A DNA stretch of 64,000 bases, taken from positions 372,001 through 436,000 of IMG/VR virus record IMGVR_UViG_3300034072_000758, one strand, 5' to 3'. A program made the translations under genes and the position numbers. Below the pieces are notes generated by a model. The model was not told the origin of the DNA. It searched no databases and saw only the letters and a program-made list of their open reading frames with translations. How positions within the stretch are numbered: the stretch's first letter is position 1; every line of letters starts with the position of its first letter. Positions 37,953 through 64,000 of this stretch are shown piece by piece.

Positions 37953-37989
37953 AATCATTAAAACCGGTTTTAATGAACATAAATACTAT

Positions 37990-38292: not shown

Positions 38293-38323
38293 AATATGGA
38301 GGATTAGCACGGAGTAATGTAAA

Positions 38324-39702: not shown

Positions 39703-39711
39703 ATCTTTCTC

Positions 39712-40062
39712 CTATAAGTTCATTCGGCGTTTTGCGTTGGCGAGATAGGTGTGAATGTTCTCCTTACCAATCTCGTTCATGCTGTGTACCGTGTAGGCTG
39801 GGAGCTTGAGGTCATTGTCTATACAATGATCTACCAACCATTTGGCACAATCATAGCCTGTTTTTTCTACGTTGAACACCCCGCCATAATGTAGATCAGC
39901 CAAATCGTGATCGAAAGACACATGTGCGGGGAGGCCGTTATTTATGATGTAATCTTTGAACTCGTCAAAGTTACGGACAATAACGTATGAAGCCACCGGA
40001 AGCTTCACCCAAGTGACTTCCGATGGCTCACGCATGTCATCTAAGAACAGATGATATGTCAA
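39712..40062 (-). CDS. Cyclic-phosphate-processing receiver-like domain protein
   Basis: LFLDD.R.P; SFDHDL; TGYDCAKWL; HS.N..G..NI. Confidence 0.7.
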   Translation of the reverse strand: MTYHLFLDDMREPSEVTWVKLPVASYVIVRNFDEFKDYIINNGLPAHVSFDHDLADLHYGGVFNVEKTGYDCAKWLVDHCIDNDLKLPAYTVHSMNEIGKENIHTYLANAKRRMNL

Positions 40063-51398: not shown

Positions 51399-51584
51399 GC
51401 TATAGCGTCTTCGGTGCTGGTAAGCGCTTGGCCATACTGACCGAAATCACGGTTGGATCATCGCTCAAGCGAGCGTAATCTTCCTCCGCCATGTCGATGG
51501 TATATGTCCCCGATAATCGATCTCACCGTTACATAATCGGGTGGGGAACTTCCGGCCTTCATTTTTCATATCGTCTCCTGATAA

Positions 51585-51613
51585 AAAGACCCACCCGATT
51601 ACTCAGGTGGGTC
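51585..51613. terminator. Bidirectional terminator
   Basis: AAAAGACCCACC-loop-GGTGGGTCTTT. Confidence 0.7.
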
Positions 51614-51770
51614 TTTGCTTTAACACAAGAGATAACCCACTCTTTTAGGGAGTTTTATCGTGGGGCGTTCCACGTTTTAGGAGACCGGCATGACTAAACC
51701 CATCACCGATATAAAAAGCATACACCACTCATTGAAGATTGCGCAATTTATTTTTACAGTTTCTTAACAT

Positions 51771-51928
51771 AAAAAAAAGAGCACCGGAACGAGGACCGAT
51801 GCTCTTTCTTTTTCCAACCCCAAATTAATGGGAACGGTGAGTTTCACTTGAACACCTCAAGAGTTGTTAACGCGGTGCGTTCCGCATCACAGACATTCGA
51901 GAAAGGAGTAAACAAAATGTCTGCGAAG
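51771..51928 (-). ncRNA. Candidate multi-hairpin sRNA with anti-SD loop
   Basis: TTTACT-16-TATTAT promoter (51960-51933); four hairpins; 12-bp terminator with T-run. Confidence 0.55.
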
Positions 51929-51989
51929 CCTTATAATATATGGGAAAATTTACTTAGTAAACTTTTTTTCAGAAAAATGAAAAAATAAT

Positions 51990-52018
51990 TTGACAAAGAT
52001 TCGTGGATTTTGATAAAT
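51990..52018 (+). promoter_or_regulatory. Promoter region of the main tRNA operon
   Basis: TTGACA at 51990 with ATAAATA at the -10 position. Confidence 0.55.
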
Positions 52019-52094
52019 AGAATTGTAACGGACGAAACCGCATGTTGCGATCTCGCCCACCATCACGAAATTCAAGAAGGAAAGACCCTTTCAA

Positions 52095-52235
52095 ATGTTT
52101 GCCGCCGTCGCCACCATGATCAATATTGCCAATCAAGTCGATACCGACTTTGATATGGCTATTGCCATGCCCGCCACGCAGCAGCCATTTAGCGTGGGGT
52201 CAATCCATCTGACAGGTGATGATACTGGAATTTAA
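52095..52235 (+). CDS. 46-aa tRNA-operon leader peptide
   Basis: GAAGGA RBS; MFAAVATMINIANQVDTDFDMAIAMPATQQPFSVGSIHLTGDDTGI. Confidence 0.7.
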   Translation: MFAAVATMINIANQVDTDFDMAIAMPATQQPFSVGSIHLTGDDTGI

Positions 52236-52304
52236 AACAGTTCACACCAATCAAAACAGATAAGGATCGACCCCCGAAGCGCAAAGTTTCGGGGGTTTTC
52301 TTTT
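52196..52304 (+). promoter_or_regulatory. Attenuator: antiterminator and intrinsic terminator
   Basis: Terminator ACCCCCGAAG-CGCAAAG-TTTCGGGGGT plus T-run (52270-52304); GGGGTCAATCC (52196-52206) pairs 10/11 with GGATCGACCCC (52264-52274). Confidence 0.7.
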
Positions 52305-52349
52305 GTCTAAACACTTTGTCCGAAGTTTGTATACAAATTTAGGACATAT

Positions 52350-52421
52350 GCCACGATAGCTGAGAAGGATTAGCGGCTGTCTGAAAAGCAGTAGAGAGAC
52401 GTTCGATACGTCTTCGTGGCA
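52350..52421 (+). tRNA. tRNA-Phe(GAA), atypical D-loop
   Basis: GCCACGA/TCGTGGC acceptor; loop CTGAAAA. Confidence 0.85.
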
Positions 52422-52422
52422 C

Positions 52423-52496
52423 AGTAGATTAGCTCAGTCTGGTAGAGCACACGCTTGATAAGCGTTAGGTCACTGGTTCAAATCCAGTATCTACTA
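52423..52496 (+). tRNA. tRNA-Ile(GAU)
   Basis: Cloverleaf; loop TTGATAA. Confidence 0.9.
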
Positions 52497-52497
52497 C

Positions 52498-52570
52498 GGT
52501 CGATTAGCTCAGTTGGTAGAGCACTGTCTTGATAAGGCATAGGTCGCTGGTTCGAATCCAGCATCGACTA
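52498..52570 (+). tRNA. tRNA-Ile(GAU), second copy
   Basis: Cloverleaf; loop TTGATAA. Confidence 0.92.
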
Positions 52571-52594
52571 CCTCCTTCGGGAGACTTTATTAAT

Positions 52595-52668
52595 GTAGCC
52601 GTAGCTCAGTCTGGTAGAGCATCTGGTTGAAACCCAGAGTGTCAGTGGTTCAAATCCACTCGGTTACA
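52595..52668 (+). tRNA. tRNA-Phe(GAA), second copy
   Basis: Cloverleaf; loop TTGAAAC. Confidence 0.9.
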
Positions 52669-52670
52669 CT

Positions 52671-52748
52671 TGCGGATTGGGGGAGCTTGGAGTCCCCGCT
52701 GGCCTCATAAGCCAGAGATCACCGGTTCAAGTCCGGTATCCGCTCCCA
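52671..52748 (+). tRNA. tRNA-Met(CAU), initiator-like
   Basis: 1:72 T-T mismatch; loop CTCATAA; encoded CCA; lacks the GGG/CCC anticodon-stem pairs. Confidence 0.75.
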
Positions 52749-52796
52749 ATACTTCCCTCCGGGGATGTAGTCTTTGACATTGTGAATAACGATTAT

Positions 52797-52870
52797 ACAA
52801 GCGTAGCTCAGTCCGGTAGAGCGACGGTCTCATACGCCGTTTGTCGCAGGTTCGAATCCTGCCGCTTGTA
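52797..52870 (+). tRNA. tRNA-Met or Ile2 (CAU)
   Basis: Cloverleaf; loop CTCATAC. Confidence 0.85.
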
Positions 52871-52871
52871 C

Positions 52872-52947
52872 TGAGGGTTGGTGTAGTAGGTAACATAGCT
52901 GACTTTGAATCAGAAGATGGCAGGTTCGAGACCTGCACCCTCAGCCA
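52872..52947 (+). tRNA. tRNA-Gln(UUG)
   Basis: T1-A72; loop CTTTGAA; encoded CCA. Confidence 0.92.
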
Positions 52948-52951
52948 ATAT

Positions 52952-53023
52952 TTCCGTGTAGCTCAATGGTAGAGCACCCGCCTGTTAAGCGGACGGTTGC
53001 TGGTTCGAGTCCAGCCACGGGAG
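52952..53023 (+). tRNA. tRNA-Asn(GUU)
   Basis: Cloverleaf; loop CTGTTAA. Confidence 0.92.
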
Positions 53024-53033
53024 CGGAGGGATT

Positions 53034-53154
53034 GTAGGTGGACCAGATGGCATGGGGAACCTTCATATGTGAATGTCGTATAAGTGAACCCGTATAGGGT
53101 GAATACGCTCCCCCTATGTTGGGAGAGATTGTGGTTCGAATCCACACGTTTACA
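53034..53154 (+). ncRNA. tRNA-like element with an expanded, non-canonical centre
   Basis: Perfect T-arm TGTGG-TTCGAAT-CCACA; weak acceptor stem; no canonical anticodon loop. Confidence 0.45.
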
Positions 53155-53155
53155 C

Positions 53156-53231
53156 CTGAGTGTGGGGGAGTCTGGCCGTCCCTGTCGGTTTTGGAAACCG
53201 AAGATCGTGAGTTCAAATCTCACCACTCAGA
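53156..53231 (+). tRNA. tRNA-Pro(UGG)
   Basis: Cloverleaf; loop TTTGGAA. Confidence 0.9.
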
Positions 53232-53276
53232 CAAGGCATTGTAGGTGGGCGTTCGCGCGGTGAAACCTTCGATTAT

Positions 53277-53353
53277 GGTGATGTATCTCAGTCTGGTAGA
53301 GAGGCGCGTTGTCAGCGCGACGGTCGCGGGTTCGAATCCCGTCTTCACCGCCA
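53277..53353 (+). tRNA. tRNA-Asp(GUC)
   Basis: Cloverleaf; loop TTGTCAG; encoded CCA. Confidence 0.9.
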
Positions 53354-53354
53354 A

Positions 53355-53426
53355 GGTCTCATAGTTCATCGGTTAGAACACCGCCCTGTCACGGCGGAGG
53401 GACGGGTTCGATTCCCGTTGAGATCG
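53355..53426 (+). tRNA. tRNA-Asp(GUC), second copy
   Basis: Cloverleaf; loop CTGTCAC. Confidence 0.92.
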
Positions 53427-53428
53427 CC

Positions 53429-53650
53429 CTACAGAATTGTAATCTCGTCAGCCTTCACAGTGAAAGCTAAATCCTTACCGGAGACTTCGAAATGGTATTC
53501 ACCATTTCCCAGATCGACAAGCATATCGCTCACCGTACCTTTTTTCACCCTGCGATTTTGACCGTATTGAGTAACGGTGATCGACTTGTTGAGCGATGCT
53601 TTGAGCTTTGGTTGGCGAGCATACGCCATGAGCTTTTCGGAGAGTTTCAT
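53429..53650 (-). CDS. Hypothetical protein
   Basis: Last gene of a five-gene antisense cassette. Confidence 0.55.
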   Translation of the reverse strand: MKLSEKLMAYARQPKLKASLNKSITVTQYGQNRRVKKGTVSDMLVDLGNGEYHFEVSGKDLAFTVKADEITIL

Positions 53651-53895
53651 GGTTTGTTCAGTGCCTCTAAAATGACTTTGATATTCTCGATCATCCGAGC
53701 TTTACCGGCGTCGTCGTGAGCCGCATAAATTTCATCCAAAGTTTTTTCTTTGGGTTTAATCGGATCGGGAACTGATGTGTCGCCAGCCAATCGTAAGCTA
53801 TTGCTCATGCTAACATATTCGCGGGCTTCTTCTAATGTGGAACAACCATGTCCCAATAAAGGTTGCCACCGATTGTCTGCGAAAAACTCGATCAT
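53647..53895 (-). CDS. Hypothetical protein
   Basis: Start moved to ATG 53895 (ATGA overlap with the upstream stop). Confidence 0.55.
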   Translation of the reverse strand: MIEFFADNRWQPLLGHGCSTLEEAREYVSMSNSLRLAGDTSVPDPIKPKEKTLDEIYAAHDDAGKARMIENIKVILEALNKP

Positions 53896-54227
53896 ACGGA
53901 TGTCAATCCGGCTTTGAGACACCATGCGTTCCATTGATCTTGGGCGTAGTTCATGGCGTCTTGTTCCGTGACACCCTTTTCGGAAAGACACTTCAAGCTA
54001 TGGTCCGGGTTCTTCCCACCAAACCACGCAGTCATTTTGACATGTGGTCCATGAACGCTCATGTTGACGCAGCGATCACCGTGGTATGTGCGCTCGATAG
54101 TACAGACCCTATACGATCCTGACCAACCTTCGATCTTAGAGACGCCAGCCCAACTAATAGTGGGTAAGCCGGGAGCGCTCCAATCGTCCGGTGTCTTCTT
54201 GGTCTTTGGTTTCCAAACTAAGGTCAT
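53892..54227 (-). CDS. Hypothetical protein
   Basis: ATGA-coupled; 111 aa. Confidence 0.6.
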   Translation of the reverse strand: MTLVWKPKTKKTPDDWSAPGLPTISWAGVSKIEGWSGSYRVCTIERTYHGDRCVNMSVHGPHVKMTAWFGGKNPDHSLKCLSEKGVTEQDAMNYAQDQWNAWCLKAGLTSV

Positions 54228-54775
54228 TTCGTCACCAGTTCTGCCAACGCGGCCTTGGCTTCCTCGACAGCCAGTTGCATTTGACCCATTTCTTCAAAGG
54301 TCATTTGGATCGGACCATTGGTAGCTAAGTGGACGTTGATGCCCTTTGTGGGGTTCTTCATTTGGTCGAACCGTTCTTCGTCATAATAGTTCGATTGGAA
54401 TTTAATGGCATCCTGTAATGTTTTATAATTACCCGGATACCGAGCCATAGATTCTTTTGCCTGATGAAGAATGTATTCATCGACGGTGGCGAATTGAGCA
54501 AGATCGGGATTAGTCCCGCGATAATATTTGTAATTGTAACCTGAACCCAGATTGACGATGATTACCACCTGACTTCCACGAGAGAAAGTCTTTCGGATTT
54601 CGACTTGAGGAAAGCCTAGCTTAATCCCGGTGATTTTGGCTTTCCAAGCCACTTTATCATCGTCGCTCATGTTGGATTGATAGCCGCCCGTAGGACCACC
54701 ATCGAAGCCATAGTCGTCGGCCCATTCTTGCTTGGTTTTGACTTTTTTGGGTTTATCCCACATTAGCAAGGGCAT
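54224..54775 (-). CDS. Hypothetical protein
   Basis: 183 aa; GAGG RBS. Confidence 0.65.
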   Translation of the reverse strand: MPLLMWDKPKKVKTKQEWADDYGFDGGPTGGYQSNMSDDDKVAWKAKITGIKLGFPQVEIRKTFSRGSQVVIIVNLGSGYNYKYYRGTNPDLAQFATVDEYILHQAKESMARYPGNYKTLQDAIKFQSNYYDEERFDQMKNPTKGINVHLATNGPIQMTFEEMGQMQLAVEEAKAALAELVTK

Positions 54776-54776
54776 A

Positions 54777-55079
54777 CTATTCCTCGATACGATGTTTGAT
54801 TACGGTATGGACTGTTCGGGTTTCTACGACAACATACTGTACGGGCGTTTTATTATATGTGCGCTGCCGCTCAATGAATGCCTTGGTACTTTCAAGCGTC
54901 GGAAAGCCATTGGCACGATCCCCGCGCCCCATGTTGATTTCTTGAAGATGTGGATAACCATTGTCGATCATCACCTCAAAATCGACGCTAGTGTATGTCT
55001 TCTCATTATTTTGAGGATCGCTCAAGATAATCTCCATGAAAATGTTGCGATAATATATCACGACATTTTCATTCGTCAA
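54777..55079 (-). CDS. Hypothetical protein
   Basis: 100 aa. Confidence 0.55.
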   Translation of the reverse strand: MTNENVVIYYRNIFMEIILSDPQNNEKTYTSVDFEVMIDNGYPHLQEINMGRGDRANGFPTLESTKAFIERQRTYNKTPVQYVVVETRTVHTVIKHRIEE

Positions 55080-55083
55080 TCAT

Positions 55084-55157
55084 CTGTGTGTAGCTCAGTT
55101 TGGTAGAGTGTTCGCCTCGGACGCGAAAGGCCGCAGGTTCAAATCCTGTCACACAGA
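55084..55157 (+). tRNA. tRNA-Pro(CGG)
   Basis: Cloverleaf; loop CTCGGAC. Confidence 0.92.
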
Positions 55158-55159
55158 CC

Positions 55160-55276
55160 TTAGAACGTGATCGACATCTTGTTCAAATAAATGAACAGAA
55201 CGATCAGTGATCCGATGGCACTCCAAATGAGGATGCCGAAGATAAGCTTAAAAGCTCGGTCGTAAGAAGATTTCAT
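55160..55276 (-). CDS. 38-aa single-TM membrane peptide
   Basis: GAGG RBS; MKSSYDRAFKLIFGILIWSAIGSLIVLFIYLNKMSITF; below the ORF-track cutoff. Confidence 0.55.
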   Translation of the reverse strand: MKSSYDRAFKLIFGILIWSAIGSLIVLFIYLNKMSITF

Positions 55277-55359
55277 TTTAGTTTCCTCAGTGTTTTCTAC
55301 GATGATCACTGTTTTTTACACAAATGTCAATAATATTTAGCGACATAATGTCGCAGTAT

Positions 55360-55431
55360 GCTCAGGTAGGTCAGTGGTAGACCGTCTCTTTCGTAATGAG
55401 AATGCCGGGGGTTCGATTCCCTCTCTGAGCA
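55360..55431 (+). tRNA. tRNA-Thr(CGU)
   Basis: Cloverleaf; loop TTCGTAA. Confidence 0.88.
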
Positions 55432-55475
55432 CGGACTTCATTAAGTGTCTATTGAAAAGAAAGGAGGACAACGAA

Positions 55476-55706
55476 ATGCAAGTACAAACCCACAAACAAG
55501 TAAAACTCCATCGCAACAACGAACGCGATACTCGTTGGATTCCTTCTGAGTTCGCTCATGAAGGGCGAACGGTAGACCTGAAAAATGGCGGCGAGTGGAG
55601 CCGTGGATGGATTGTTAAGGAAGTATTTGACCCCGCTGTGGAATCAAAGTATATTCAAGAACAGTCCCAGAACTACAAGAACCACCGTAAGGCAACTGAC
55701 GTGTGA
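55476..55706 (+). CDS. Hypothetical protein
   Basis: AAGGAGG RBS before ATG 55476. Confidence 0.65.
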   Translation: MQVQTHKQVKLHRNNERDTRWIPSEFAHEGRTVDLKNGGEWSRGWIVKEVFDPAVESKYIQEQSQNYKNHRKATDV

Positions 55707-55735
55707 TTCGTGAGGGACGCTCTGTCCCTCATTAT

Positions 55736-55806
55736 TGAGGGATGGTGTAACGGTAACACATCTGACTCTGACTCAGAAGTTCTAGGTTCGAATCCTAGTC
55801 CCTCAA
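55736..55806 (+). tRNA. tRNA-Gln(CUG)
   Basis: T1-A72; loop CTCTGAC. Confidence 0.92.
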
Positions 55807-55817
55807 CAAGGTATGTT

Positions 55818-56099
55818 ATGCGACTTATGACCTCCGATGAAATACAACCCTTGGAAAAGAAGTTCATGGGGTACATTTCGACTCCGGTGTTGGATATTGA
55901 TGGGATCGGTCAGTTATGCGTTAATAGAGTATATATTCCTACTGATAAACTTGGTATCGGCAAATGGTATGTCACAGATGTGGCGACACCCGATGCGCAT
56001 TTCGCCTTCATTCGTAACCCAGATCATTCGATCATGGAGGTAATTGTTTCCGGGGATACATCAGACGAGTATCTGATGAAGTTGGCCGTATGTCTTTAA
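55818..56099 (+). CDS. Hypothetical protein
   Basis: Start reassigned downstream of the tRNA. Confidence 0.5.
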   Translation: MRLMTSDEIQPLEKKFMGYISTPVLDIDGIGQLCVNRVYIPTDKLGIGKWYVTDVATPDAHFAFIRNPDHSIMEVIVSGDTSDEYLMKLAVCL

Positions 56100-56482
56100 T
56101 CGAAACATCTAGCCTGTCTGGGCTTGAGGCGATGGCTATAGATTATGGCTTGGATGGCTTTCACGAGTATGCCAACAAATTTTCTTTTTTTATGCGTCTC
56201 GAAGAAGTCGATTACGACAAGTTCATAACCGAAGAATTGGTTATGGAAGTTGATGGATATTCTTTTCGGTTTAAAACCAACCCAGAAGAAACAGACGCAG
56301 AAATGGCATATGGCTGGCTTAAGTGTATATACACCGATACTTTTGAAGTTTCTATCGTCGGCGACGTAGAGCAAAACGAAAGTAAGCAACTTGTCACGAG
56401 TAACAGTTTGTCGCAAGATGAACTTGAAGATATAGTGTTTCGGTTAGCGTTGTTGACCAGTGATTACGGTATGGTCGATTAG
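56090..56482 (+). CDS. Hypothetical protein
   Basis: 130 aa; stop lies inside tRNA-Val. Confidence 0.55.
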   Translation: MSLIETSSLSGLEAMAIDYGLDGFHEYANKFSFFMRLEEVDYDKFITEELVMEVDGYSFRFKTNPEETDAEMAYGWLKCIYTDTFEVSIVGDVEQNESKQLVTSNSLSQDELEDIVFRLALLTSDYGMVD

Positions 56483-56547
56483 CTCAGTGGTAGAGCGCTC
56501 CCTTGACATGGGAGAGGCCGTAGGTTCGAACCCTACATCGACCACCA
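56473..56547 (+). tRNA. tRNA-Val(GAC)
   Basis: Cloverleaf; loop TTGACAT; encoded CCA. Confidence 0.92.
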
Positions 56548-56644
56548 ATTTTATTTTGGTGACTAAGTAAATTTAAATTGTAAATGCTTTGATGGGTGTG
56601 GTTATATCAGAAAAACCACAAAACAAAACTATCGGAGCAAAGCA

Positions 56645-56770
56645 ATGTCTAAGCCAGATTTCTTACGTCACTGTAATTTCCTCACGCCCGCTCAGGTTCG
56701 TGGGGTAACAATTACTCAGCCAGTAGCCCAACCGGCTGAAAAACAAGATGCTGTGGATAAAAGTAAATAA
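56645..56770 (+). CDS. 41-aa small ORF
   Basis: GGAG RBS; MSKPDFLRHCNFLTPAQVRG... Confidence 0.4.
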   Translation: MSKPDFLRHCNFLTPAQVRGVTITQPVAQPAEKQDAVDKSK

Positions 56771-56811
56771 ATATTTACAGCATGGCCTTGAATGTTGTAT
56801 TCTAGGCTTAT

Positions 56812-56885
56812 CGGGGTTTAGCGCAGTCTGGTAGCGCGTCCGTTTTGGGTGCGGAAGGTCGAGAGTTCGAATCCCTCAATCCCGA
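56812..56885 (+). tRNA. tRNA-Pro(UGG), second copy
   Basis: Cloverleaf; loop TTTGGGT. Confidence 0.92.
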
Positions 56886-56919
56886 CATGTCCACGGTAAC
56901 CATTCCGTAATGCGAAAGG

Positions 56920-56948
56920 CCCTGCCACCGGAAGGTGGTGGGGTTTTT
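56920..56948 (+). terminator. Intrinsic terminator
   Basis: CCCTGCCACC-GGAA-GGTGGTGGGG plus T-run. Confidence 0.75.
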
Positions 56949-57021
56949 CATTTCCCAACAAAATAAATTGACTTGAAAATCTTCTTTGTGCGATGATCGT
57001 TCATCAGTATAAGAGAGTATC

Positions 57022-57324
57022 ATGTTAAAACTATCGACCGAAGTTCAAAACATTTTGTATAAGGCTGTAACGTTAGAAAACGAATACATGCCTACAGACT
57101 TAGAAATCACTACTTTGGGTGATTTTCTTCTGAATGTAGTCGAGCGCGCTCCCGATGCTGATTTTTTGGATCACCCGGAGATATTCGTCACGGTGTTTGA
57201 TTTGATGCTTAATTACACAAGTACAGTATGCCCCAATCATCCTCGTGTTCAATATATACGAGACCTGAAACAATTCTTTGAAGCACTTTGGAAAGACAAA
57301 AATGAAACTCGAAAAACTAATTAG
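57022..57324 (+). CDS. Hypothetical protein
   Basis: 100 aa. Confidence 0.55.
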   Translation: MLKLSTEVQNILYKAVTLENEYMPTDLEITTLGDFLLNVVERAPDADFLDHPEIFVTVFDLMLNYTSTVCPNHPRVQYIRDLKQFFEALWKDKNETRKTN

Positions 57325-57730
57325 TGACGCGAAAAAAGGTGACGCTCCGTCTCAGTATAGCATTGGTATGCTATATGGTTACGGTACGCCGCTGACGCCG
57401 GACTTTTCCGAAGCAATCTTCTGGTTTGAAAAAGCCAGAGAACAGGATCACGCTGAGGCCATTTATAATCTCGGTGCGATTTATCAGTTCGAAGAGAACT
57501 TCAAAAATCTGGAAATTGCTAATCAGTATTTCGAAGAAGCTGCCAAGCTGAAACACGATGTCGCTGCGTACAATCTCGGTCTGAACTATATGACCGGCCA
57601 CGGAGTTCGTAAGGATGACGAGAAGGCGAAGTATTGGTTCGAGCAAGCCATTTTGTTTGGCAATAAGGTTGCGGTAACTATGTTGGCGCAATTGAAAACA
57701 AATCCAACTTTTTATAAAAGAGTTGCTTGA
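57302..57730 (+). CDS. Sel1-like repeat protein
   Basis: Three A.Y.LG..Y..G...A..WFE.A repeats. Confidence 0.9.
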   Translation: MKLEKLISDAKKGDAPSQYSIGMLYGYGTPLTPDFSEAIFWFEKAREQDHAEAIYNLGAIYQFEENFKNLEIANQYFEEAAKLKHDVAAYNLGLNYMTGHGVRKDDEKAKYWFEQAILFGNKVAVTMLAQLKTNPTFYKRVA

Positions 57731-57755
57731 CAGATCAAAACTGTTGATATATAAC
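57727..57755 (+). promoter_or_regulatory. Sigma70-type promoter for the large ncRNA
   Basis: TTGACA-17-TATAAC directly before the first long stem. Confidence 0.55.
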
Positions 57756-57762
57756 CTTAGAC

Positions 57763-59074
57763 ATGGTGATGAACCGGTGACTTGAGCTTTGGTAAAGCTC
57801 GAATTTACCAGTTAAAGAGAATTAAGCTGGTCCCCGATTTGCTTAGTTCGACGGTTCATCATCATATTGAACTAAATTGGATGGAGAGGTTGCGGTAACG
57901 AGTCCCCAGAGTCATTTGACTCAGCCTTTGGACTTAACCCCGTCCGTGCTTTTCGGTGTGGTAGCTCAAGATTGACAAGAGCGTTCCATCCAATTTAGTT
58001 TAATTGGGTAAGTCTTCGGGCCTACCGTTGGGGGAAGGATCAACACGGCTGCTGGCATGTTCCAGACAGGTGCCTTCCCTTTTAAATTCGCTCGAAAGAG
58101 CAAAGAGATTGTTCGGTAGGATCAAATCTTGGGTGATCGTGCGCTGGTCATCATGAGATAAAAGACCGGGGGCTAGTCCAGCCTCAAGTATCGGTGAAAG
58201 TCCGATCCGAACAACCAAATTCTGTGCTTCGTTGCGAAAGCGAAGGGGATTGACAGTCAGTCCCTAGCCTCATTGGAGGTCATCACAGAACGTTACCCCA
58301 CGGTGAAATATACGTGTGGCAGAGGGAGAGAGCCAATTGCGAGGAAATGCGCGCCGGTCTTTCCCTCATATAATTCGCTTGAAAGAGCAAATAACAAGTT
58401 GGCCGCTCGCATGATCGTTCCGAGAGGTAAGAGCAAAGATCGGTAGATGTTTCTACCAAATTGACGCCAACAACCGAGAAAGAGGGAACTACGGGCCTAA
58501 CCAATCCGTAAATCTCTCAGTGAGTGGACAGGAGTTGCGGACGCCCTTGGTCGGGAAGGTCACAACTCCGAAGTTGCTCAAAGTTTGGGCCGAAAGGCCA
58601 TAGCCGCGTGGTGACGAACCAGTAAGTCGGCTACGAGTTTCACCGAGAATGAGGCTGGGTGTACCCGTAAGTCCTCTACTCTCTGGTGTTTAAAGTTGAA
58701 TACGGACGAGCGCCCTGTGCGCGAACAGGTGATGGGCGCAGCCCTAGAGGATGGCAACGTCCGCTATACCTTCGGGGAAGCATCGGTTGGTAGTGATTAA
58801 TCCAATCCGCTCGTGTTCTACTCTAAACATTTCGGGTGACTAACATTTAGGGCTGGGGTCGCTACCCAAATCCGGTGTTGGTGTACAATTAATGAACGGC
58901 AAACTAGACTTGTTTCAGTAATTCTTTGTGCTGGCTTATTTGATAGAGCAAACAGCCTGAAAACTAAATAGAATACTCCCTGTGTGATCTGGCACTGGCA
59001 GGATTGTGGTTGACAAGACCCACTCGGCGAGTCTAAATGGACAGGCATTTACGGTACGCCTACTTATTACCGTT
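57763..59074 (+). ncRNA. Large ornate structured RNA, GOLLD-like
   Basis: ~1.3 kb without a credible ORF; dense stems with GNRA/UUCG loops and long-range pairings; ends at tRNA-Ala. Confidence 0.75.
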
Positions 59075-59076
59075 AT

Positions 59077-59149
59077 GGGGCCATAGCTCAGTTGGTAGAG
59101 CACCTGCTTTGCAAGCAGGATGTCGTCGGTTCGACTCCGACTGGCTCCA
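59077..59149 (+). tRNA. tRNA-Ala(UGC)
   Basis: G3-U70; loop TTTGCAA. Confidence 0.95.
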
Positions 59150-59266
59150 CTCGAATTTTGTGATAGATCGCCCCATAGGGGATATGCGTCCGTCACAGAG
59201 TTCCGGGGTTTGGGCCGCTTCCTCTCAAAAAGAAAAAGCGGTCGCTTAAGTTTTCGGAGTTGCGTA

Positions 59267-59596
59267 ATGAACCGGGCAGAAGCATTACTTGGCACAAAGC
59301 CAAAAGTTCCTAATCAGGTTCCTCCCGAAGCTAAACAACATATTCATGAATGCATCAAAAACGCCATGAATAATGGCGACACATCCTGCTATATCAATGT
59401 CCACGATCACCGTGTTCCTATCAGCACACTCGATTTGGAAGTCATTGAAGTATACCTCAAAGCCGAAGGATATAGATGTCATGTCCATTCCTATACGGAT
59501 GAACATGGCAGCGATGATGTTCTAGTCATCAAATGGGGAGAAACTTTCTTCGAAAGAGTGAAAAGATGGTTCCGTTCTATCCAAGAAAAAAACTAA
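59267..59596 (+). CDS. Hypothetical protein
   Basis: GGAG RBS before ATG 59267. Confidence 0.65.
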   Translation: MNRAEALLGTKPKVPNQVPPEAKQHIHECIKNAMNNGDTSCYINVHDHRVPISTLDLEVIEVYLKAEGYRCHVHSYTDEHGSDDVLVIKWGETFFERVKRWFRSIQEKN

Positions 59597-59877
59597 AAGT
59601 ATATTACGGATACTACTACTCCAAAAGTCCCCAACCGGTGCGCGGGCGAAGATATTTGGGTTGGTATCGCCGGAATGCAACACGCTTTCATCGTATTTAC
59701 CGCGTAGTAGAAAGCGTTGCTACGCTTGATCCACCAATTCGTCCCGGTCTTCCCAGAATGTATTTTACGGTCAAGTATTCCGGTCGTGATTGGGATTACG
59801 GTGAATTGAATTGGACCAAAGAACAGGCCGATGAACGTTGGCTGAACAGAAGAAACGAAGGTGCTTGTTTCACCTGA
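59566..59877 (+). CDS. Hypothetical protein
   Basis: Basic/aromatic ORF; start uncertain. Confidence 0.45.
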   Translation: MVPFYPRKKLKVYYGYYYSKSPQPVRGRRYLGWYRRNATRFHRIYRVVESVATLDPPIRPGLPRMYFTVKYSGRDWDYGELNWTKEQADERWLNRRNEGACFT

Positions 59878-59879
59878 TA

Positions 59880-59986
59880 TGGGCTGCTTGGAGTTTAGCT
59901 GGGTTCGAATCCCGCTCGATCCACCATTAAGATTGGGTCGATGTCACCGGAAGACAAGAGCGGGTTCGAGTCCCGTCCAGTCCACA
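59880..59986 (+). ncRNA. Anticodon-less double tRNA-like (Ala minihelix) element with crossed acceptor stems
   Basis: Two T-arms; TCGATCC-A-CCA pairs with the downstream GGGTCGA (G3-U70); GGGCTG pairs with the distal CAGTCC. Confidence 0.6.
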
Positions 59987-59994
59987 CCCTTTAT

Positions 59995-60067
59995 GGGGCC
60001 ATAGCTCAATTGGTAGAGCGCAAGTATGGCATACTTGAGGTCGCCGGTTCGATCCCGGCTGGCTCCA
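59995..60067 (+). tRNA. tRNA-Ala(GGC)
   Basis: G3-U70; loop ATGGCAT. Confidence 0.92.
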
Positions 60068-60085
60068 CATTTATTAGTTGACAGC

Positions 60086-60113
60086 TTGACAACAAAATAA
60101 AACCTGTTACTCT
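60086..60113 (+). promoter_or_regulatory. Sigma70-type promoter
   Basis: TTGACA-16-TACTCT with extended TG. Confidence 0.6.
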
Positions 60114-60145
60114 CCTGAATAACTCTAATATCAGGAGAATAAAAT

Positions 60146-61045
60146 ATGGTACATCAACCCATGCGTGGTCCGCAAATCGGCTCCGTTTCCGACTACGACG
60201 ACTATGACGATTATGGCTATTCGGAAATGGATAGCTATGGCATCGTTCGTCGGCATCGCAGCCAAAAAGAAAATATCAACAATTCTAAATGGGTTGATCC
60301 TATTCACGGTGGTCGCCGAACGAAACAGTCCGATCCCTATTACTTCTCCGAATATTTCCTTTTCGGTCGTCACGGCGACATCAAGCAAAAGGGCGTCACT
60401 GGCGATTATAGTGATCGTCTGAGTGAATGGGATCGTCTTCGTTATGACTTTCTGATGCGCAAGCATGTGCCGAATGGTTGGATGCGCGCAAGTCCTAGCC
60501 AACTCGAACCCTTCCTGACCGAATATTTCGGGGTCTTCAAGAACATCAAGGTGGTGGCTCTGGCCGAAGGCTGTAAAATGAGCGGCTATAACTACTTCAT
60601 CGTCTGGTATACATACGAAGAAGTGGCCGAACGCTCGAAGCCGAAGATCAAGCGCAAGATTGAGGCTGAAAGGAACAAGCTCAAGGAAGCCGAAGATCAA
60701 GGCTACCGCAATTCCGATCTGGGGATGTACCTTAAGTCGGCGGTGCGGGCGCTGGTCAGCGCGGCTCGTCCTATGTTCGGTGGCAAGCCCAAGGTTCACT
60801 GGCGCATTGACGCTCGTATCAAGCGTCTGGAAGCCATGACTATCGATGATCGCAAGCGCAAGAAGGGTGAGTTCAACAAACTCGCTAAGCGCATCCTCAA
60901 GCTGCTGAACGACACCAAGGCGGACCTGACCGCTCAAAAGTCGTACTACAGTTCCGATCTGGACAAGGCGATTGAAACCGTCGAAACCAAGATCAAGGAC
61001 TACAATACGCCGGGGTATAACCCATACGCGCGGGGCGCAGAATAA
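60146..61045 (+). CDS. Hypothetical protein (probably two domains)
   Basis: AGGAG RBS; 299 aa. Confidence 0.7.
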   Translation: MVHQPMRGPQIGSVSDYDDYDDYGYSEMDSYGIVRRHRSQKENINNSKWVDPIHGGRRTKQSDPYYFSEYFLFGRHGDIKQKGVTGDYSDRLSEWDRLRYDFLMRKHVPNGWMRASPSQLEPFLTEYFGVFKNIKVVALAEGCKMSGYNYFIVWYTYEEVAERSKPKIKRKIEAERNKLKEAEDQGYRNSDLGMYLKSAVRALVSAARPMFGGKPKVHWRIDARIKRLEAMTIDDRKRKKGEFNKLAKRILKLLNDTKADLTAQKSYYSSDLDKAIETVETKIKDYNTPGYNPYARGAE

Positions 61046-61482
61046 TGATCGTCGGCGAGTTCAAAACCGCAACCGGCATGACGACCATCTTTCATGATGC
61101 GGATGGTTATCATGTCAACGCCGCTGGTCGAGAAGACATTCACGGGGCGATGACGGCGGATGCGGTCGTTCGTTATCTTTGCGGTGCTTTGATCAGCGCC
61201 AATCACAAGCTGGGTATTGACCAGTTTGAAGATATGGAAGCGTTCGAAGAAACCGATCCGGGGATCGAAGCTGCCGCCTCCTTCTATCGTCAATTGGGGG
61301 ATGGTGACGAAGTTTATTCATTTGTTCCTCTAAACGAAGTGTGTATCCGTGGTACTCCCGAACGGCTGAAAGCTCTAGGGGAGTTTCTGATCGAAAGTTC
61401 AACTATGAGTGACGATCACGCACATTTCCAAACTCAGGGCGGCGTCAAGCCCGATTTCGTTGTGGTTAAGTCAGATGAATGA
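61045..61482 (+). CDS. Hypothetical protein
   Basis: TAATG coupling. Confidence 0.6.
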   Translation: MIVGEFKTATGMTTIFHDADGYHVNAAGREDIHGAMTADAVVRYLCGALISANHKLGIDQFEDMEAFEETDPGIEAAASFYRQLGDGDEVYSFVPLNEVCIRGTPERLKALGEFLIESSTMSDDHAHFQTQGGVKPDFVVVKSDE

Positions 61483-61855
61483 AAAACTGGAAGCCAAACT
61501 TGCTTGGGAAAAACTCTGTAAGCAAGCAAATACCAATCCGGCCTATACGCGCGACGTTGTGTTATCGACGGATAACAGTTTCCGCATCGCGGCTAAATCG
61601 GCGGTCGATGATCGATACGCGGATTGCGTATCAATAGAAATTTCGCATGAGGGTGATCCCCAGATGGGTTGGTCTTATGCTCATTTCTCACCGGCCCGTG
61701 CGCGTCTGTTCGCTCACATGCTAATCGAACGTGCCGATGCGCTGGAAGCAAAAAACGGCGTAGAGATCATCGATACCGAAAGCCTACAAGATCAGGCGCA
61801 TCGTCTTCGGGTGGCGGTTGATGAAAAACGCCGAAAGCTGGGATTGTTGAAATGA
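61475..61855 (+). CDS. Hypothetical protein
   Basis: Start at ATG 61475, overlapping the upstream gene end. Confidence 0.6.
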   Translation: MNEKLEAKLAWEKLCKQANTNPAYTRDVVLSTDNSFRIAAKSAVDDRYADCVSIEISHEGDPQMGWSYAHFSPARARLFAHMLIERADALEAKNGVEIIDTESLQDQAHRLRVAVDEKRRKLGLLK

Positions 61856-62055
61856 AACATTCCGACTTTGAACTCAACATGGAGTTTCGATGCGGTGGTA
61901 GTGATTGGAAAGTCACCGACATCGGAACTCGCACAATTATTGCCATCAAACTTACGGGTACGATCAACGACCTAACGTGGCTTGCTGGTCCGCCATACGC
62001 TCTCGAAGAAGTAGTCTTCGATGAAAATGATTTCGCAGGATGTGAAGTAATATGA
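61852..62055 (+). CDS. Hypothetical protein
   Basis: ATGA coupling; W.VTDIGTRTIIAI. Confidence 0.6.
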   Translation: MKHSDFELNMEFRCGGSDWKVTDIGTRTIIAIKLTGTINDLTWLAGPPYALEEVVFDENDFAGCEVI

Positions 62056-62375
62056 AATTGATTATTCTTCAAGCTGAACACGCAGAAGCCGCAATCGCTA
62101 CTCGCATCGTAACTCTGGAATACGAGTCAAAAGAAGCTGTCGATAAGTTGATCGAAGGCTACCTAGCATCGGCCCCCAAGCCGTTTACTTGGCGCGAATA
62201 CCGAGCGACTACGCCGGAAGAACGAGCCAAAAGAAAAGAAGAACGGGAAAATTGGGCTAAAGCTCAACCCGATCTTCAAATCGGCAAAGCGAAATTCCCA
62301 GCCGAAGTTCTTGTAAGGGCTTCTACTTACGTGTATGATCTGAATGCGTTCTTCGAAGAGTTTAAGGAAGGTTAA
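62052..62375 (+). CDS. Hypothetical protein
   Basis: ATGA coupling. Confidence 0.6.
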   Translation: MKLIILQAEHAEAAIATRIVTLEYESKEAVDKLIEGYLASAPKPFTWREYRATTPEERAKRKEERENWAKAQPDLQIGKAKFPAEVLVRASTYVYDLNAFFEEFKEG

Positions 62376-62378
62376 TTC

Positions 62379-62648
62379 ATGTACCACTTCATCGCCCTAC
62401 TTCTCACGTTTCTTCACGTGATCATCGCCATCATTGTTGGTGGTATCGGTTCAGTTTTGTTCATGTTCAGGACAAAAAATTTCCGCGATCTGACCGCAAT
62501 GATTCTGGTCATCGGTGGCATCTATATGCTGATCGGGGCTATTTTCTTCCCGGTGTTTGCTATCGGTTCGTTCGCCCTGTTCTGGCCAGTTTACATCGTC
62601 ACCCTGTATCTTCTTCACATCAAGAAAGAAGACAATACGCTCACATAA
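62379..62648 (+). CDS. Small multi-TM membrane protein
   Basis: Hydrophobic; stop lies inside tRNA-Thr. Confidence 0.65.
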   Translation: MYHFIALLLTFLHVIIAIIVGGIGSVLFMFRTKNFRDLTAMILVIGGIYMLIGAIFFPVFAIGSFALFWPVYIVTLYLLHIKKEDNTLT

Positions 62649-62714
62649 GTTCAATTGGTAGACTATCTCCTTGGTACGGAGGCAGTAGGAGTTCGAGTCT
62701 CCTTGTGAGCACCA
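62639..62714 (+). tRNA. tRNA-Thr(GGU)
   Basis: GCTCACA/TGTGAGC acceptor; loop TTGGTAC; encoded CCA. Confidence 0.88.
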
Positions 62715-62910: not shown

Positions 62911-64000
62911 TCACACGAACCAGTCGGTTCCTTCTTTTGTATCCAATAGGGTGACGCCGCGTTCGGCCAAAGCATTCCGAATGATGTCCGCCATGACCCA
63001 ATCTTTACCGGCTCTTGCCAGATTGCGGTCGTAGATCAGACCTTCGATGATTTCACGCTCGTCCTTAGACACATTCTTGAACCAATCCTCGTATCGATGA
63101 TTGAGGACACCAAGCAATTGCGCAGCCGCAACGAACTCGGACTTGGTTTCCGGCTTCATCAAACTGGATAATTCAGCCAGAGCCAAAGGCGTATTCAGAT
63201 CATCATGAAGATGATCGAGGAATGATTGTGGCACCGGAACTTCGTGCGTGGTGAGCTTTGCCGTCTGGCGCAGGAAGGCATAGTAGCCATCCAGCCGGTT
63301 CTTCGTGGTTTGAAGAAGTTCTGGGGTCCAATTCAAGACGGTTCTATAATGCGCTGAGAGCAACGCCAAGCGCACGATTTCCCCATCCCATTCCTTTACG
63401 AGATCGTGGACCAACACGACATTCCCTACCGACTTGGACATCTTGCCGTTATTGGTCAGGAACTCGTTATGCATCCAGTAGCGGGAATACTCGTGATTAT
63501 GGCCGCAATGACCTTGAGCACATAACCCCTGAGAGATTTCATTCTCATGGTGCGGAAAGGCCAAGTCTATACCCCCGCCATGAATGTCGATAGGAAGACC
63601 CAGATTGGCTTCAATCATGGCCGAGCACTCAATGTGCCAACCGGGGCGTCCAGCACCCCACGGACTTTCCCAAGCCGGTTCACCGGGCTTCGACGGTTTC
63701 CATAGTACGAAGTCTTTTTGGTCGCGCTTATACGACACCTCACCGATCCGGCTTTCGGCTTCGTCATCCGAACCATTGGAGAAAACACCATGATCCGGGT
63801 ATGAATCCACGTCAAACAAAACGTGACCTTCCGACACATACGCATGGCCGTTCTTGATCAGACGCACAATCATGTCGATCATGGCCGGGATATGGTTGGT
63901 CGCCAGAGGTTCAATGGGAGGCCGTAGGACGCCCACGGAGGCCATGTCTTGACGATATATGTCCGTGTAGCGTTCAGCAATAACCTTGTAGTCCACGCCC
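62911..64000 (-). CDS. cysS: Cysteinyl-tRNA synthetase (N-terminus beyond the window)
   Basis: DFVLWK..WESPWGAGRPGWHIECSAM; DIHGGGIDLAFPHHENE; WMHNE; KMSKS; DDLNTP; ADIIRNAL. Confidence 0.96.
   Translation of the reverse strand, partial: GVDYKVIAERYTDIYRQDMASVGVLRPPIEPLATNHIPAMIDMIVRLIKNGHAYVSEGHVLFDVDSYPDHGVFSNGSDDEAESRIGEVSYKRDQKDFVLWKPSKPGEPAWESPWGAGRPGWHIECSAMIEANLGLPIDIHGGGIDLAFPHHENEISQGLCAQGHCGHNHEYSRYWMHNEFLTNNGKMSKSVGNVVLVHDLVKEWDGEIVRLALLSAHYRTVLNWTPELLQTTKNRLDGYYAFLRQTAKLTTHEVPVPQSFLDHLHDDLNTPLALAELSSLMKPETKSEFVAAAQLLGVLNHRYEDWFKNVSKDEREIIEGLIYDRNLARAGKDWVMADIIRNALAERGVTLLDTKEGTDWFV

What the first reader, a model, noticed from the sequence alone, without database searches (positions are those of the whole stretch)
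57763..59074. ~1.3-kb ornate non-coding RNA (GOLLD-like or new) next to tRNA-Ala
No credible ORF lies between a sigma70 promoter and tRNA-Ala(UGC). Stable tetraloop stems are dense (GCTC-GAAA-GAGC, GGCC-GAAA-GGCC, GTC-TTCG-GGC) and there are long-range pairings: TTGTTCGG/CCGAACAA; TTCTGTG/CACAGAA; AGGCTG ~58652 with CAGCCT ~58933; GTGTACC with GGTGTAC. An internal repeat TTCGCT(C/T)GAAAGAGCAAA occurs at ~58087 and ~58374. Established: GOLLD and ROOL RNAs are giant phage-associated RNAs found next to tRNA genes, of unknown function. From memory, the GAAAGAGCAAATAAC and CAGCCTGAAA segments resemble GOLLD. The locus is longer than the ~0.8 kb typical of GOLLD.
Basis: partly seen in the sequence, partly recalled or inferred. 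Interest (0 to 1): 0.8.

Follow-up and report, generated by a model that had tools for sequence, protein, structure and literature searches.

The report
Orphan giant RNA beside phage tRNA
A 517-kb phage genome has a 1.0-1.3 kb gene-free, strongly folding stretch with its own promoter just upstream of a tRNA gene; it is most likely a new large non-coding RNA, unrelated in sequence to the known giant phage RNAs GOLLD and ROOL, but no relatives exist to prove it.

Summary
The observation largely holds. Window 57731-59076 is the largest ORF-free gap in the window, has no coding periodicity, and lies between a near-consensus sigma70 promoter and tRNA-Ala(UGC). The 998-nt core (57763-58760) folds far better than shuffles: z about -7 against a genome background of -2.4 +/- 1.7, rank 2 of 41. 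Two long helices are far beyond chance, and the first starts at the predicted transcript 5' end.

The GOLLD resemblance is not supported. No Rfam family, including GOLLD, ROOL and group I/II introns, matches even at E <= 10.

The phage is a deep singleton (nearest polymerase 44-53% identical). Scans of viral, metagenome, genome and annotated-phage collections found no orthologue, so there is no covariation evidence. The internal 'duplicated module' reduces statistically to a 19/20 repeat. The one external look-alike, in a 412-kb phage, is only marginally significant. The last ~300 nt are unstructured.

Best reading (about 0.55): an early-transcribed, stable structured RNA co-transcribed with tRNA-Ala and released by RNase P. 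It would be a new family within the known kind of large tRNA-island phage RNAs (GOLLD, ROOL, phage K lnc001). Main rival: a functionless structured tRNA leader.

The parts
57727..57755 (+). Sigma70-type promoter: -35 TTGACA (57727-57732), 17-nt spacer, -10 TATAAC (57750-57755). The -35 hexamer contains the TGA stop codon of the upstream Sel1-repeat gene.
   Evidence: 11/12 match, among the five best on the + strand. The same perfect -35 hexamer precedes the tRNA-Glu cluster, tRNA-Met and several gene starts. Function is inferred, not shown.
57763..57865 (+). 5' terminal domain. It is closed by a 13-bp helix (57763-57775 with 57853-57865) that starts at the predicted transcript 5' end (about 57761-57763), and it encloses three hairpins.
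   Evidence: I1, perfect 14-bp core; all pairs p > 0.8; 73% of nucleotides confidently paired. About 0.003 such repeats are expected by chance in 1.3 kb (my estimate).
57866..58004 (+). Second domain, closed by a 19-bp helix (57867-57885 with 57985-58003). It directly abuts the first helix, so the two may stack coaxially.
   Evidence: 20 nt, 95% complementary; p > 0.8.
58030..58222 (+). 'Module 1': P1 stem 58031-58038 with 58073-58080; invariant hairpin UUCGCUC-GAAA-GAGCAAA at 58087-58104; P3 closing helix 58109-58116 with 58207-58214, which competes with the long-range helix; then AACAACC.
   Evidence: P3 is predicted only when the 5' part is folded alone, not in the full-length fold.
58221..58289 (+). 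Three-hairpin cluster closed by UCUGUG/CACAGA. It includes a GAAA tetraloop hairpin at 58227-58245.
   Evidence: (all four helices p > 0.8).
58322..58480 (+). 'Module 2': P1 58322-58330 with 58359-58367; hairpin UUCGCUU-GAAA-GAGCAAA at 58374-58391; P3 58398-58403 with 58466-58471; then AACAACC.
   Evidence: Similarity to module 1 outside the 20-mer is not significant.
58173..58660 (+). Candidate long-range helix (58179-58186 with 58650-58657, plus 58191-58199 with 58638-58646) closing a central domain of about 480 nt.
   Evidence: p > 0.8 in the full-length fold; -35.2 kcal/mol versus -29.6 +/- 2.2 in shuffles; 4 of 191 as good. Suggestive only.
58482..58780 (+). 3' structured region. It includes the hairpins at 58482-58518 and 58531-58569, GGCC-GAAA-GGCC at 58588-58599, GCGCCC/GGGCGC at 58710-58739, and the GCAA hairpin at 58747-58772.
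58781..59076 (+). Poorly structured linker running up to the tRNA, with no confident pairs, no terminator and no good promoter.
   Evidence: 0-13% of nucleotides confidently paired; z = +1.2 for 58801-59100.
59077..59150 (+). tRNA-Ala(UGC), probably co-transcribed. RNase P cleavage at its 5' end would define the 3' end of the upstream RNA.
   Evidence: (74.9 bits). Co-transcription and processing are inferred from the absence of an intervening promoter or terminator and from established pre-tRNA processing.

Best explanation
Window 57763 to about 58780, possibly extending to 59076, is the gene for a large, highly structured non-coding RNA of a 517-kb T4-like 'huge' phage.

Proposed mechanism, with the status of each step:
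1. The host sigma70 RNA polymerase starts at about 57762 from a near-consensus promoter. The promoter is present in the sequence; its use is inferred.
2. The 5' end is immediately locked into a 13-bp helix that abuts a 19-bp helix. Both helices are statistically robust. The idea that they protect the RNA from 5'-end-dependent decay is inferred.
3. About 1 kb folds into a chain of helix-closed domains carrying several GAAA tetraloops. These include two copies of an invariant 20-nt hairpin element. This is a prediction supported by thermodynamics.
4. Transcription runs without a terminator through a floppy linker of about 300 nt into tRNA-Ala(UGC). RNase P cleavage then releases the RNA (inferred).
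5. The free RNA acts as an abundant, stable RNA particle or scaffold in the infected cell, in the manner of GOLLD, ROOL and phage K lnc001. Because it is embedded in a tRNA and aminoacyl-tRNA-synthetase island, its role plausibly touches translation or tRNA handling (speculative).

It is a new family, not a GOLLD or ROOL member.
For: - Non-coding by every test.
- The promoter is among the best in the window and of the same type as those before this phage's tRNA genes.
- The 5' helix starts at the predicted transcription start.
- Folding energy of the 998-nt core: -382.9 versus -321.8 +/- 9.0 kcal/mol, z = -6.8.
- Against 40 size-matched windows of the same genome (mean -2.4, sd 1.7) it ranks second, behind only a window with three terminators and two tRNAs.
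- GC rises to 0.50-0.54, against 0.40-0.43 in the flanks.
- Strand indicators favour +: GNRA/UNCG hairpins 5 versus 1, and MFE -383 versus -346 kcal/mol. All tRNAs of this island (52350-62714) and the flanking genes are on the + strand.
- There is no intrinsic terminator inside the region, although the phage uses canonical terminators elsewhere.
- A 20-nt hairpin element is repeated 19/20, flanked each time by analogous helices and followed by AACAACC.
- Precedent: phage K lnc001 has the same layout (own early promoter, about 0.97 kb, directly upstream of tRNAs) and is that phage's most abundant transcript (PMC9241854). It has no Rfam family either and a similar z of -5.7.
Against: - No orthologue was found anywhere, so there is no covariation.
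- There are no expression data.
- The genome as a whole folds better than shuffles. With arbitrary 300-nt windows the locus is not an outlier.
- The z-score is nearly the same on the minus strand (-6.1).
- Tetraloop enrichment is only p of about 0.02.
- The two 'modules' are not significantly similar outside the 20-mer.
- The L006 look-alike is marginal once controls and multiple testing are considered.
- The long-range helix has p of about 0.02, so a single global fold is not established.
- The last ~300 nt are unstructured, and the 3' end is undefined except by the tRNA.
Confidence: 0.55

Rival explanations
1. Functionless leader or spacer. The stretch is simply the long 5' leader of the tRNA-Ala transcript, made of decayed genes, tRNA remnants or mobile-DNA scars. 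Its hairpins are incidental, and it is degraded after RNase P cleavage.
For: - tRNA-Ala has no promoter of its own, so the region must be transcribed anyway.
- Short D-arm-like remnants occur at 58934-58950 and 58783-58793.
- No homologue and no covariation.
- The 3' ~300 nt are unstructured.
- This genome's background z is already negative.
- The second-largest gap in the window is ordinary intergenic DNA.
Against: - Phage genomes are compact, and this is the largest gene-free gap in 64 kb.
- Energy excess of about 6 kcal per 100 nt over 1 kb ranks at the top of the genome.
- GC is raised relative to both flanks and to the other intergenic gap.
- The 13-bp and 19-bp helices, exactly at the predicted 5' end, are hard to explain as decay.
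- The tRNA model finds no pseudo-tRNA even at E <= 10.
Confidence: 0.25
2. Several independent small RNAs or cis-regulatory hairpin elements, strung together rather than forming one large fold.
For: - Most confident helices are local, each closing a domain of 20-140 nt.
- The long-range helix is only marginally significant.
- The 20-nt element recurs as a unit, and possibly as a small stand-alone element of about 150 nt in another phage.
Against: - There is only one good promoter and no internal terminator over 1.3 kb, while this phage uses canonical terminators elsewhere.
- No Rfam sRNA or cis-regulatory family matches.
Confidence: 0.12
3. A DNA-level element, such as a replication origin, a recombination or packaging site, or protein-binding operators. 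The imperfectly palindromic 20-mer would be a binding site.
For: - Structure z-scores are almost strand-symmetric.
- The 20-mer is an imperfect palindrome present twice.
- T4-type origins combine a promoter with a downstream non-coding stretch (established knowledge).
Against: - The region is GC-enriched, not AT-rich, and lacks iterons.
- Cumulative GC skew shows no turning point here.
- The motif occurs nowhere else in the window and nowhere else in the 517-kb contig.
- The GNRA bias is strand-specific.
Confidence: 0.05
4. A hidden protein-coding gene: recoded stop codons, frameshifts, small proteins or a pseudogene.
For: Huge phages sometimes reassign stop codons (established knowledge).
Against: - All three stop codons occur 4-13 times in every frame. 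The longest read-through frame is 182 codons, on the antisense strand.
- No periodicity.
- No suppressor tRNA among the 22 tRNAs.
- All other genes in the window read in the standard code.
- No family hits.
Confidence: 0.02

Closest known systems
GOLLD RNA (Rfam RF01998)
   Same: Encoded by phages, next to or within tRNA islands, sometimes covalently linked to tRNAs through a floppy linker. Very large (many members over 800 nt), ornate, with no ORF and unknown function. A variable 5' part and a separate 3' part (bioRxiv 10.1101/2024.12.08.627333).
   Different: No match to the GOLLD covariance model at gathering score or at E <= 10, so the universally conserved 3' region is absent. Here the best-structured part is the 5' two-thirds and the 3' end is floppy. 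The structured core is about 1.0 kb. Multimerisation is untested.
ROOL RNA (Rfam RF03087)
   Same: Phage and prophage RNA near tRNA islands, highly structured, with no known protein partner and unknown function. It can be as abundant as 16S rRNA.
   Different: No covariance-model match. ROOL is roughly 0.6-0.7 kb, with a defined P1-P19 architecture and pseudoknots. None of that is recognisable here.
Staphylococcus phage K lnc001 (no Rfam family)
   Same: The same gene layout: own early host-type promoter, roughly 1 kb of ORF-free sequence, then tRNA genes on the same strand. There is no Rfam match and the folding z is comparable (-5.7 versus -6.8) (PMC9241854).
   Different: I did not compare the two sequences directly. 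The genomes differ greatly in GC content and host. Phage K's RNA has transcript evidence and this one has none. Phage K is a 148-kb herellevirus; this is a 517-kb T4-like phage.
Small element in IMGVR_UViG_3300011989_000257 (L006, minus strand about 400 to 305)
   Same: It shares the 19-mer ATTCGCTYGAAAGAGCAAA plus two collinear 10-nt blocks with module 2, and the same stem / GAAA-hairpin / stem arrangement. It is non-coding, in a tRNA island of a 412-kb phage, and on the tRNA strand.
   Different: It is only about 100-150 nt, not 1 kb. The flank similarity is marginal against controls. No protein similarity between the two loci was detectable.

Membership tests
GOLLD (RF01998) | Sequence and structure match to the family covariance model, in particular the universally conserved 3' region | tested here: not met
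   cmscan of Rfam 15 gave no hit at gathering score and none at E <= 10 with relaxed filters on 57500-59300. Caveat: a genuine tRNA intron in another huge phage scored only 11.3 bits against the group I model, so extreme divergence cannot be excluded.
GOLLD (RF01998) | Encoded in a phage or prophage, near tRNA genes | tested here: met
   T4-like huge phage. 22 tRNAs and a CysRS in the window, with tRNA-Ala immediately downstream.
GOLLD (RF01998) | Homo-oligomeric RNA-only nanocage (14-mer) | not testable with these tools
   Needs in-vitro transcription plus cryo-EM or mass photometry.
ROOL (RF03087) | Match to the family covariance model (P1-P19 with pseudoknots) | tested here: not met
   No hit.
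ROOL (RF03087) | Phage or prophage location near tRNA islands | tested here: met
ROOL (RF03087) | Length of about 0.6-0.7 kb | tested here: not met
   The structured core is about 1.0 kb and the whole gap is 1.35 kb.
Group I / group II self-splicing introns | Covariance-model match and interruption of a host gene (flanking exons) | tested here: not met
   No Intron_gpI or group II hit even at E <= 10. The upstream Sel1 gene ends at a normal stop and the downstream tRNA-Ala is intact at 74.9 bits.
Other known large or structured bacterial RNAs (OLE, HEARO, raiA, RNase P, tmRNA, rRNA, 6S, riboswitches) | Covariance-model match | tested here: not met
   The GAAAGUCC and ACAGAAC strings reminiscent of RNase P lie only about 85 nt apart and cannot form P4 (read).
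Functional class: large tRNA-adjacent phage lncRNA (as phage K lnc001) | ORF-free stretch of at least 0.5 kb with its own promoter, on the tRNA strand and adjacent to tRNA genes | tested here: met
   compare phage K.
Functional class: large tRNA-adjacent phage lncRNA (as phage K lnc001) | Abundant discrete transcript during infection | not testable with these tools
   No transcriptome is available. The phage is known from one metagenome contig only.
Any structured RNA family | Covariation (compensatory changes) among homologues | tested here: inconclusive
   No orthologues were found. Comparing the internal repeat copies and L006 shows differing but still paired P1 and P3 stems. However, the copies are not significantly alike outside the 20-mer, so these are not valid covariation tests.

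The most novel reading that the evidence does not exclude
This is the founding member of a third, unrelated class of giant ornate phage RNA (about 1 kb or more). It would be built from repeated GAAA-tetraloop modules, tethered to a tRNA, and would self-assemble into a higher-order RNA particle or otherwise act on the translation apparatus of a huge phage that carries its own tRNAs and aminoacyl-tRNA synthetase. If so, large tRNA-island RNAs have arisen repeatedly and independently in phages.
Probability: 0.15. Interest if true: 0.85.

Novelty: new variant of a known kind. Interest (0 to 1): 0.55.

Why it matters
GOLLD and ROOL were recently shown to form RNA-only nanocages larger than a ribosome, yet their function is unknown. 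Both live beside phage tRNA genes, and phage K has an unrelated abundant RNA in the same position. A third or fourth unrelated family in the same genomic niche, here in a 517-kb phage with 22 tRNAs and a CysRS nearby, would suggest that the niche itself selects for big structured RNAs. That would narrow hypotheses towards tRNA or translation-linked roles.

Practically, the sequence is a ready single-molecule candidate for in-vitro transcription, chemical probing and cryo-EM, none of which needs homologues. The work also shows a limit of current practice. The phage is such a deep singleton that comparative methods (R-scape, Rfam) have no power here, and a genuine tRNA intron in a similar phage barely registers in Rfam.

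Tried and rejected
1. GOLLD, ROOL or any Rfam family: no hit at gathering score or at E <= 10.
2. Hidden gene or recoding: rejected.
3. DNA relatives:
   - blastn against 50,697 phage records found none, for the whole RNA or for the module core at E <= 10.
   - The 18/19-mer motif was scanned in viral contigs, metagenome contigs and genome contigs. Apart from L006, every hit I inspected lacks the flanking blocks and is a chance match. Those in metagenome contigs lie in coding sequence, and those in genome contigs are taxonomically scattered. L005 was not inspected individually.
   - A relaxed, covariation-tolerant pattern found only the window's own contig and L006.
   - Using tRNA-Ala as an anchor found only the window's own contig.
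4. Protein-anchored synteny:
   - The 299-aa neighbour has no homologue among 5.8 billion proteins and occurs on a single contig.
   - The Sel1 neighbour is found only on the window's own contig.
   - CysRS led to Sinorhizobium phage Phosso, whose equivalent region is densely coding.
   - polB relatives are at most 53% identical.
5. Internal duplication as covariation evidence: I first read it as a duplicated module of about 290 nt with compensatory changes. Shuffle tests show no significant similarity outside the 20-mer. Downgraded.
6. L006 homology: downgraded to marginal after controls. The L006 island has no comparable ORF-free gap.
7. RNase P-like strings, pseudo-tRNA arrays and an 11-nt tetraloop receptor: considered from the sequence and rejected.
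8. The second large gap (51399-52349) as a sister RNA: it is ordinary intergenic DNA with three terminators and a promoter.
9. MAFFT could not put the module stems in structural register. The first long duplexfold tests were uninformative and were replaced.
10. No positive control of the Rfam GOLLD and ROOL models on a canonical member was run.

Full report
**What the window is**

The window is part of a 516,805-bp metagenomic phage contig (IMGVR_UViG_3300034072_000758, also Ga0310127_000012). Window coordinate plus 372,000 gives the contig coordinate. The phage encodes a T4-type family B DNA polymerase, an ATP-dependent ligase, a gp15-like tail sheath stabiliser and helicases. The window also holds 22 tRNA genes and a cysteinyl-tRNA synthetase at 62911-63996.

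The closest polymerases are only 44-53% identical. Among annotated phages these are Sinorhizobium phage Phosso and Agrobacterium phage Atu_ph07. The phage is therefore a deep singleton.

**Checking the observation: is it non-coding?**

- tRNA-Ala(UGC) lies at 59077-59150.
- Between the stop codon of the Sel1-repeat gene (57728-57730) and the tRNA there is no ORF above 76 aa on either strand.
- All three stop codons occur in all six frames, so no reassignment rescues a frame. Period-3 power is 2.0, against 5.7-42 for neighbouring genes.
- None of the small ORFs matches Pfam or PHROGs.
- JGI's independent gene caller left the stretch empty.
- It is the largest ORF-free gap in the 64 kb.

The second-largest gap (51399-52349) is ordinary intergenic DNA with three canonical intrinsic terminators and a promoter. 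This contrast is useful: the phage uses standard terminators, yet none lies inside the candidate.

**Transcription signals**

TTGACA (57727-57732), a 17-nt spacer and TATAAC (57750-57755) match the sigma70 consensus at 11 of 12 positions. This is one of the five best sites on the + strand. The same perfect -35 hexamer precedes the tRNA-Glu cluster, tRNA-Met and several gene starts.

No comparable promoter lies between the candidate and tRNA-Ala. The tRNA is therefore most likely co-transcribed, and RNase P processing would define the RNA's 3' end. That last step is inferred from established pre-tRNA biology.

**Structure, with controls**

The raw z-scores looked striking: -7.0 for 57760-58420 and -3.2 for 58420-59076. 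However, this genome folds better than shuffles everywhere.

| Window size | Genome background | Candidate |
|---|---|---|
| 300 nt, arbitrary boundaries | mean z = -1.4 | about -3; not an outlier |
| 660 nt | n = 50 | 5' part: largest energy excess (-6.7 kcal per 100 nt, z = -6.8); 3' part at background (z = -2.7) |
| 998 nt | mean -2.4, sd 1.7, n = 40 | core 57763-58760: z = -6.8 (-7.3 with pooled sd); rank 2 of 41 |

The only 998-nt window that ranks higher holds three terminators and two tRNAs. Base-pair probabilities give confident helices from 57763 to about 58780 and none beyond.

Two helices are far beyond chance:
- A 13-bp helix, 57763-57775 with 57853-57865, which begins exactly at the predicted transcript start.
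- An abutting 19-bp helix, 57867-57885 with 57985-58003.

A long-range 8+9-bp helix (58179-58199 with 58638-58657) is only suggestive, with 4 of 191 shuffles as good. GNRA/UNCG hairpins number 5 against 1.6 +/- 1.3 in shuffles (p of about 0.02), and 5 against 1 between the strands.

The z-score is almost the same on the minus strand (-6.1). The strand call therefore rests on the promoter, the tRNA orientation, the tetraloop bias and the lower absolute energy of the + strand. GC rises to 0.50-0.54 inside, against 0.40-0.43 in the flanks.

**Identity**

No Rfam 15 family matches at gathering score or at E <= 10. That covers GOLLD, ROOL, OLE, HEARO, group I and II introns, RNase P and tmRNA.

There is a further caution on Rfam negatives. 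In another huge phage (L006), a genuine 530-nt intron at position 37/38 of tRNA-Arg(UCU) scores only 11.3 bits against the group I model. Rfam therefore excludes recognisable members of known families, not extremely diverged ones.

**Search for relatives**

| Search | Result |
|---|---|
| blastn, annotated phages, whole RNA | no match |
| blastn, annotated phages, module core at E <= 10 | chance hits only |
| 18-mer motif, viral contigs | only L006 of interest |
| Relaxed covariation-tolerant pattern, viral contigs | own contig and L006 only |
| 19-mer motif, metagenome contigs | chance or coding hits |
| 19-mer motif, genome contigs | chance hits |
| tRNA-Ala anchor, viral contigs | own contig only |
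| 299-aa neighbour, 5.8 billion proteins | no homologue |
| Phosso CysRS neighbourhood | densely coding, no equivalent gap |

L006 is a 412-kb phage contig. There the motif lies in a non-coding stretch of a tRNA island, on the tRNA strand, with two further collinear 10-nt blocks shared with the second repeat copy.

**Self-correction on the comparative evidence**

I first read the RNA as containing two paralogous modules of about 290 nt. Each has a P1 stem, the invariant UUCGCUY-GAAA-GAGCAAA hairpin and a P3 stem, followed by AACAACC, with compensatory differences between copies. A covariance model built from module 2 alone recovers module 1 (E = 0.003) and L006 (E = 0.007), and nothing else below E = 0.1 in 70 kb.

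Shuffle tests then showed that the two modules are not significantly alike outside the 20-mer (p of about 0.5 upstream and 0.1 downstream). The L006 flanks (p = 0.02 and 0.10) barely exceed 41 chance-hit controls. What survives is a 19/20 repeated hairpin element with analogous flanking helices, plus a marginal external look-alike. This is not valid covariation evidence.

**Comparison with what is known**

GOLLD and ROOL are phage RNAs near tRNA islands, of unknown function, that form RNA-only nanocages. [quoted passage not shown]

Phage K has two lncRNAs likened to them by position and abundance. lnc001 is the most abundant transcript and has its own early promoter (PMC9241854). In the phage K genome the lnc001 gap (about 0.97 kb) lies directly upstream of tRNA-Asp/Phe/Trp. 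It has no Rfam match and folds with z = -5.7.

The candidate shares the layout and thermodynamic signature of this class, but it belongs to none of the sequence families.

**Verdict**

The most likely reading (about 0.55) is a new, orphan large structured RNA of about 1.0 kb. It would be transcribed early by host polymerase, have its 5' end locked in long helices, be tethered through a floppy linker of about 300 nt to tRNA-Ala, and be released by RNase P.

The main rival (about 0.25) is a functionless structured tRNA leader. Smaller rivals are a string of independent small elements, a DNA-level site, and a hidden gene.

The 'GOLLD-like' interpretation is not supported. The 'new' alternative is plausible but unproven, because this phage has no relatives to compare.

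Noticed in passing
L006 (IMGVR_UViG_3300011989_000257), minus strand 1217 to 613: tRNA-Arg(UCU) interrupted by a 530-nt intron at anticodon-loop position 37/38 (ARAGORN). Rfam's group I intron model gives only 11.3 bits (E = 4.2), so this is either a very divergent group I intron or something else.
   Followed up: partly
L006 minus strand about 470 to 296: Non-coding element of about 150 nt downstream of that tRNA. It is predicted to fold as a multi-helix junction closed by AGGAACG/CGTTCCT and followed by a T-run, and it contains the same 19-mer GAAA hairpin as the window RNA.
   Followed up: partly
L006 3234-3318 (minus strand): Sub-threshold Y RNA-like (YrlA) match between two tRNA-Gly genes (39.2 bits versus a gathering score of 69; E = 4e-6). 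It may be a tRNA-like module or a degenerate tRNA.
   Followed up: no
window 52350-62714 and 62911-63996: A translation island: 19 tRNA genes on the + strand interspersed with small orphan ORFs, next to a phage-encoded cysteinyl-tRNA synthetase on the minus strand that runs off the window end. Three further tRNA-Glu copies lie at 35847-36127 on the minus strand.
   Followed up: partly
window 51399-52349: Second-largest ORF-free gap, just upstream of the main tRNA cluster. It contains three canonical intrinsic terminators (about 51586-51620, 51770-51812 and 52268-52300), a TTGACA promoter at 51990 and a possible small ORF. It looks like ordinary intergenic DNA, with z = -5.1 driven by the terminators.
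   Followed up: yes
window 39700-40359: Strongest z-score of the 660-nt scan (-8.5), spanning the 3' end of the AAA-ATPase gene (minus strand) and the region beyond it. Only weak terminator-like hairpins and modest inverted repeats were found, so it is unexplained.
   Followed up: partly
L047 (Staphylococcus phage K, KF766114) 37679-38650, minus strand: The published, highly abundant lnc001 locus upstream of tRNA-Asp/Phe/Trp has no Rfam family (nothing at E <= 0.01) and a folding z of -5.7. It appears to be an unclassified large phage RNA. The lnc002 area gives a near-threshold DUF3800-I RNA hit (43.4 versus 44.2 bits) at 13632-13768.
   Followed up: partly
window 58783-58793 and 58934-58950: Short stretches resembling the D-arm of the adjacent tRNA-Ala (10/11 and 14/17 identical). 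They may be remnants of decayed tRNA genes within the floppy 3' part of the locus. The tRNA model finds no pseudo-tRNA at E <= 10.
   Followed up: partly
window 60146-61045: A 299-aa ORF next to the locus has no homologue among 5.8 billion clustered proteins and no Pfam or PHROG match. It is a true orphan gene.
   Followed up: partly
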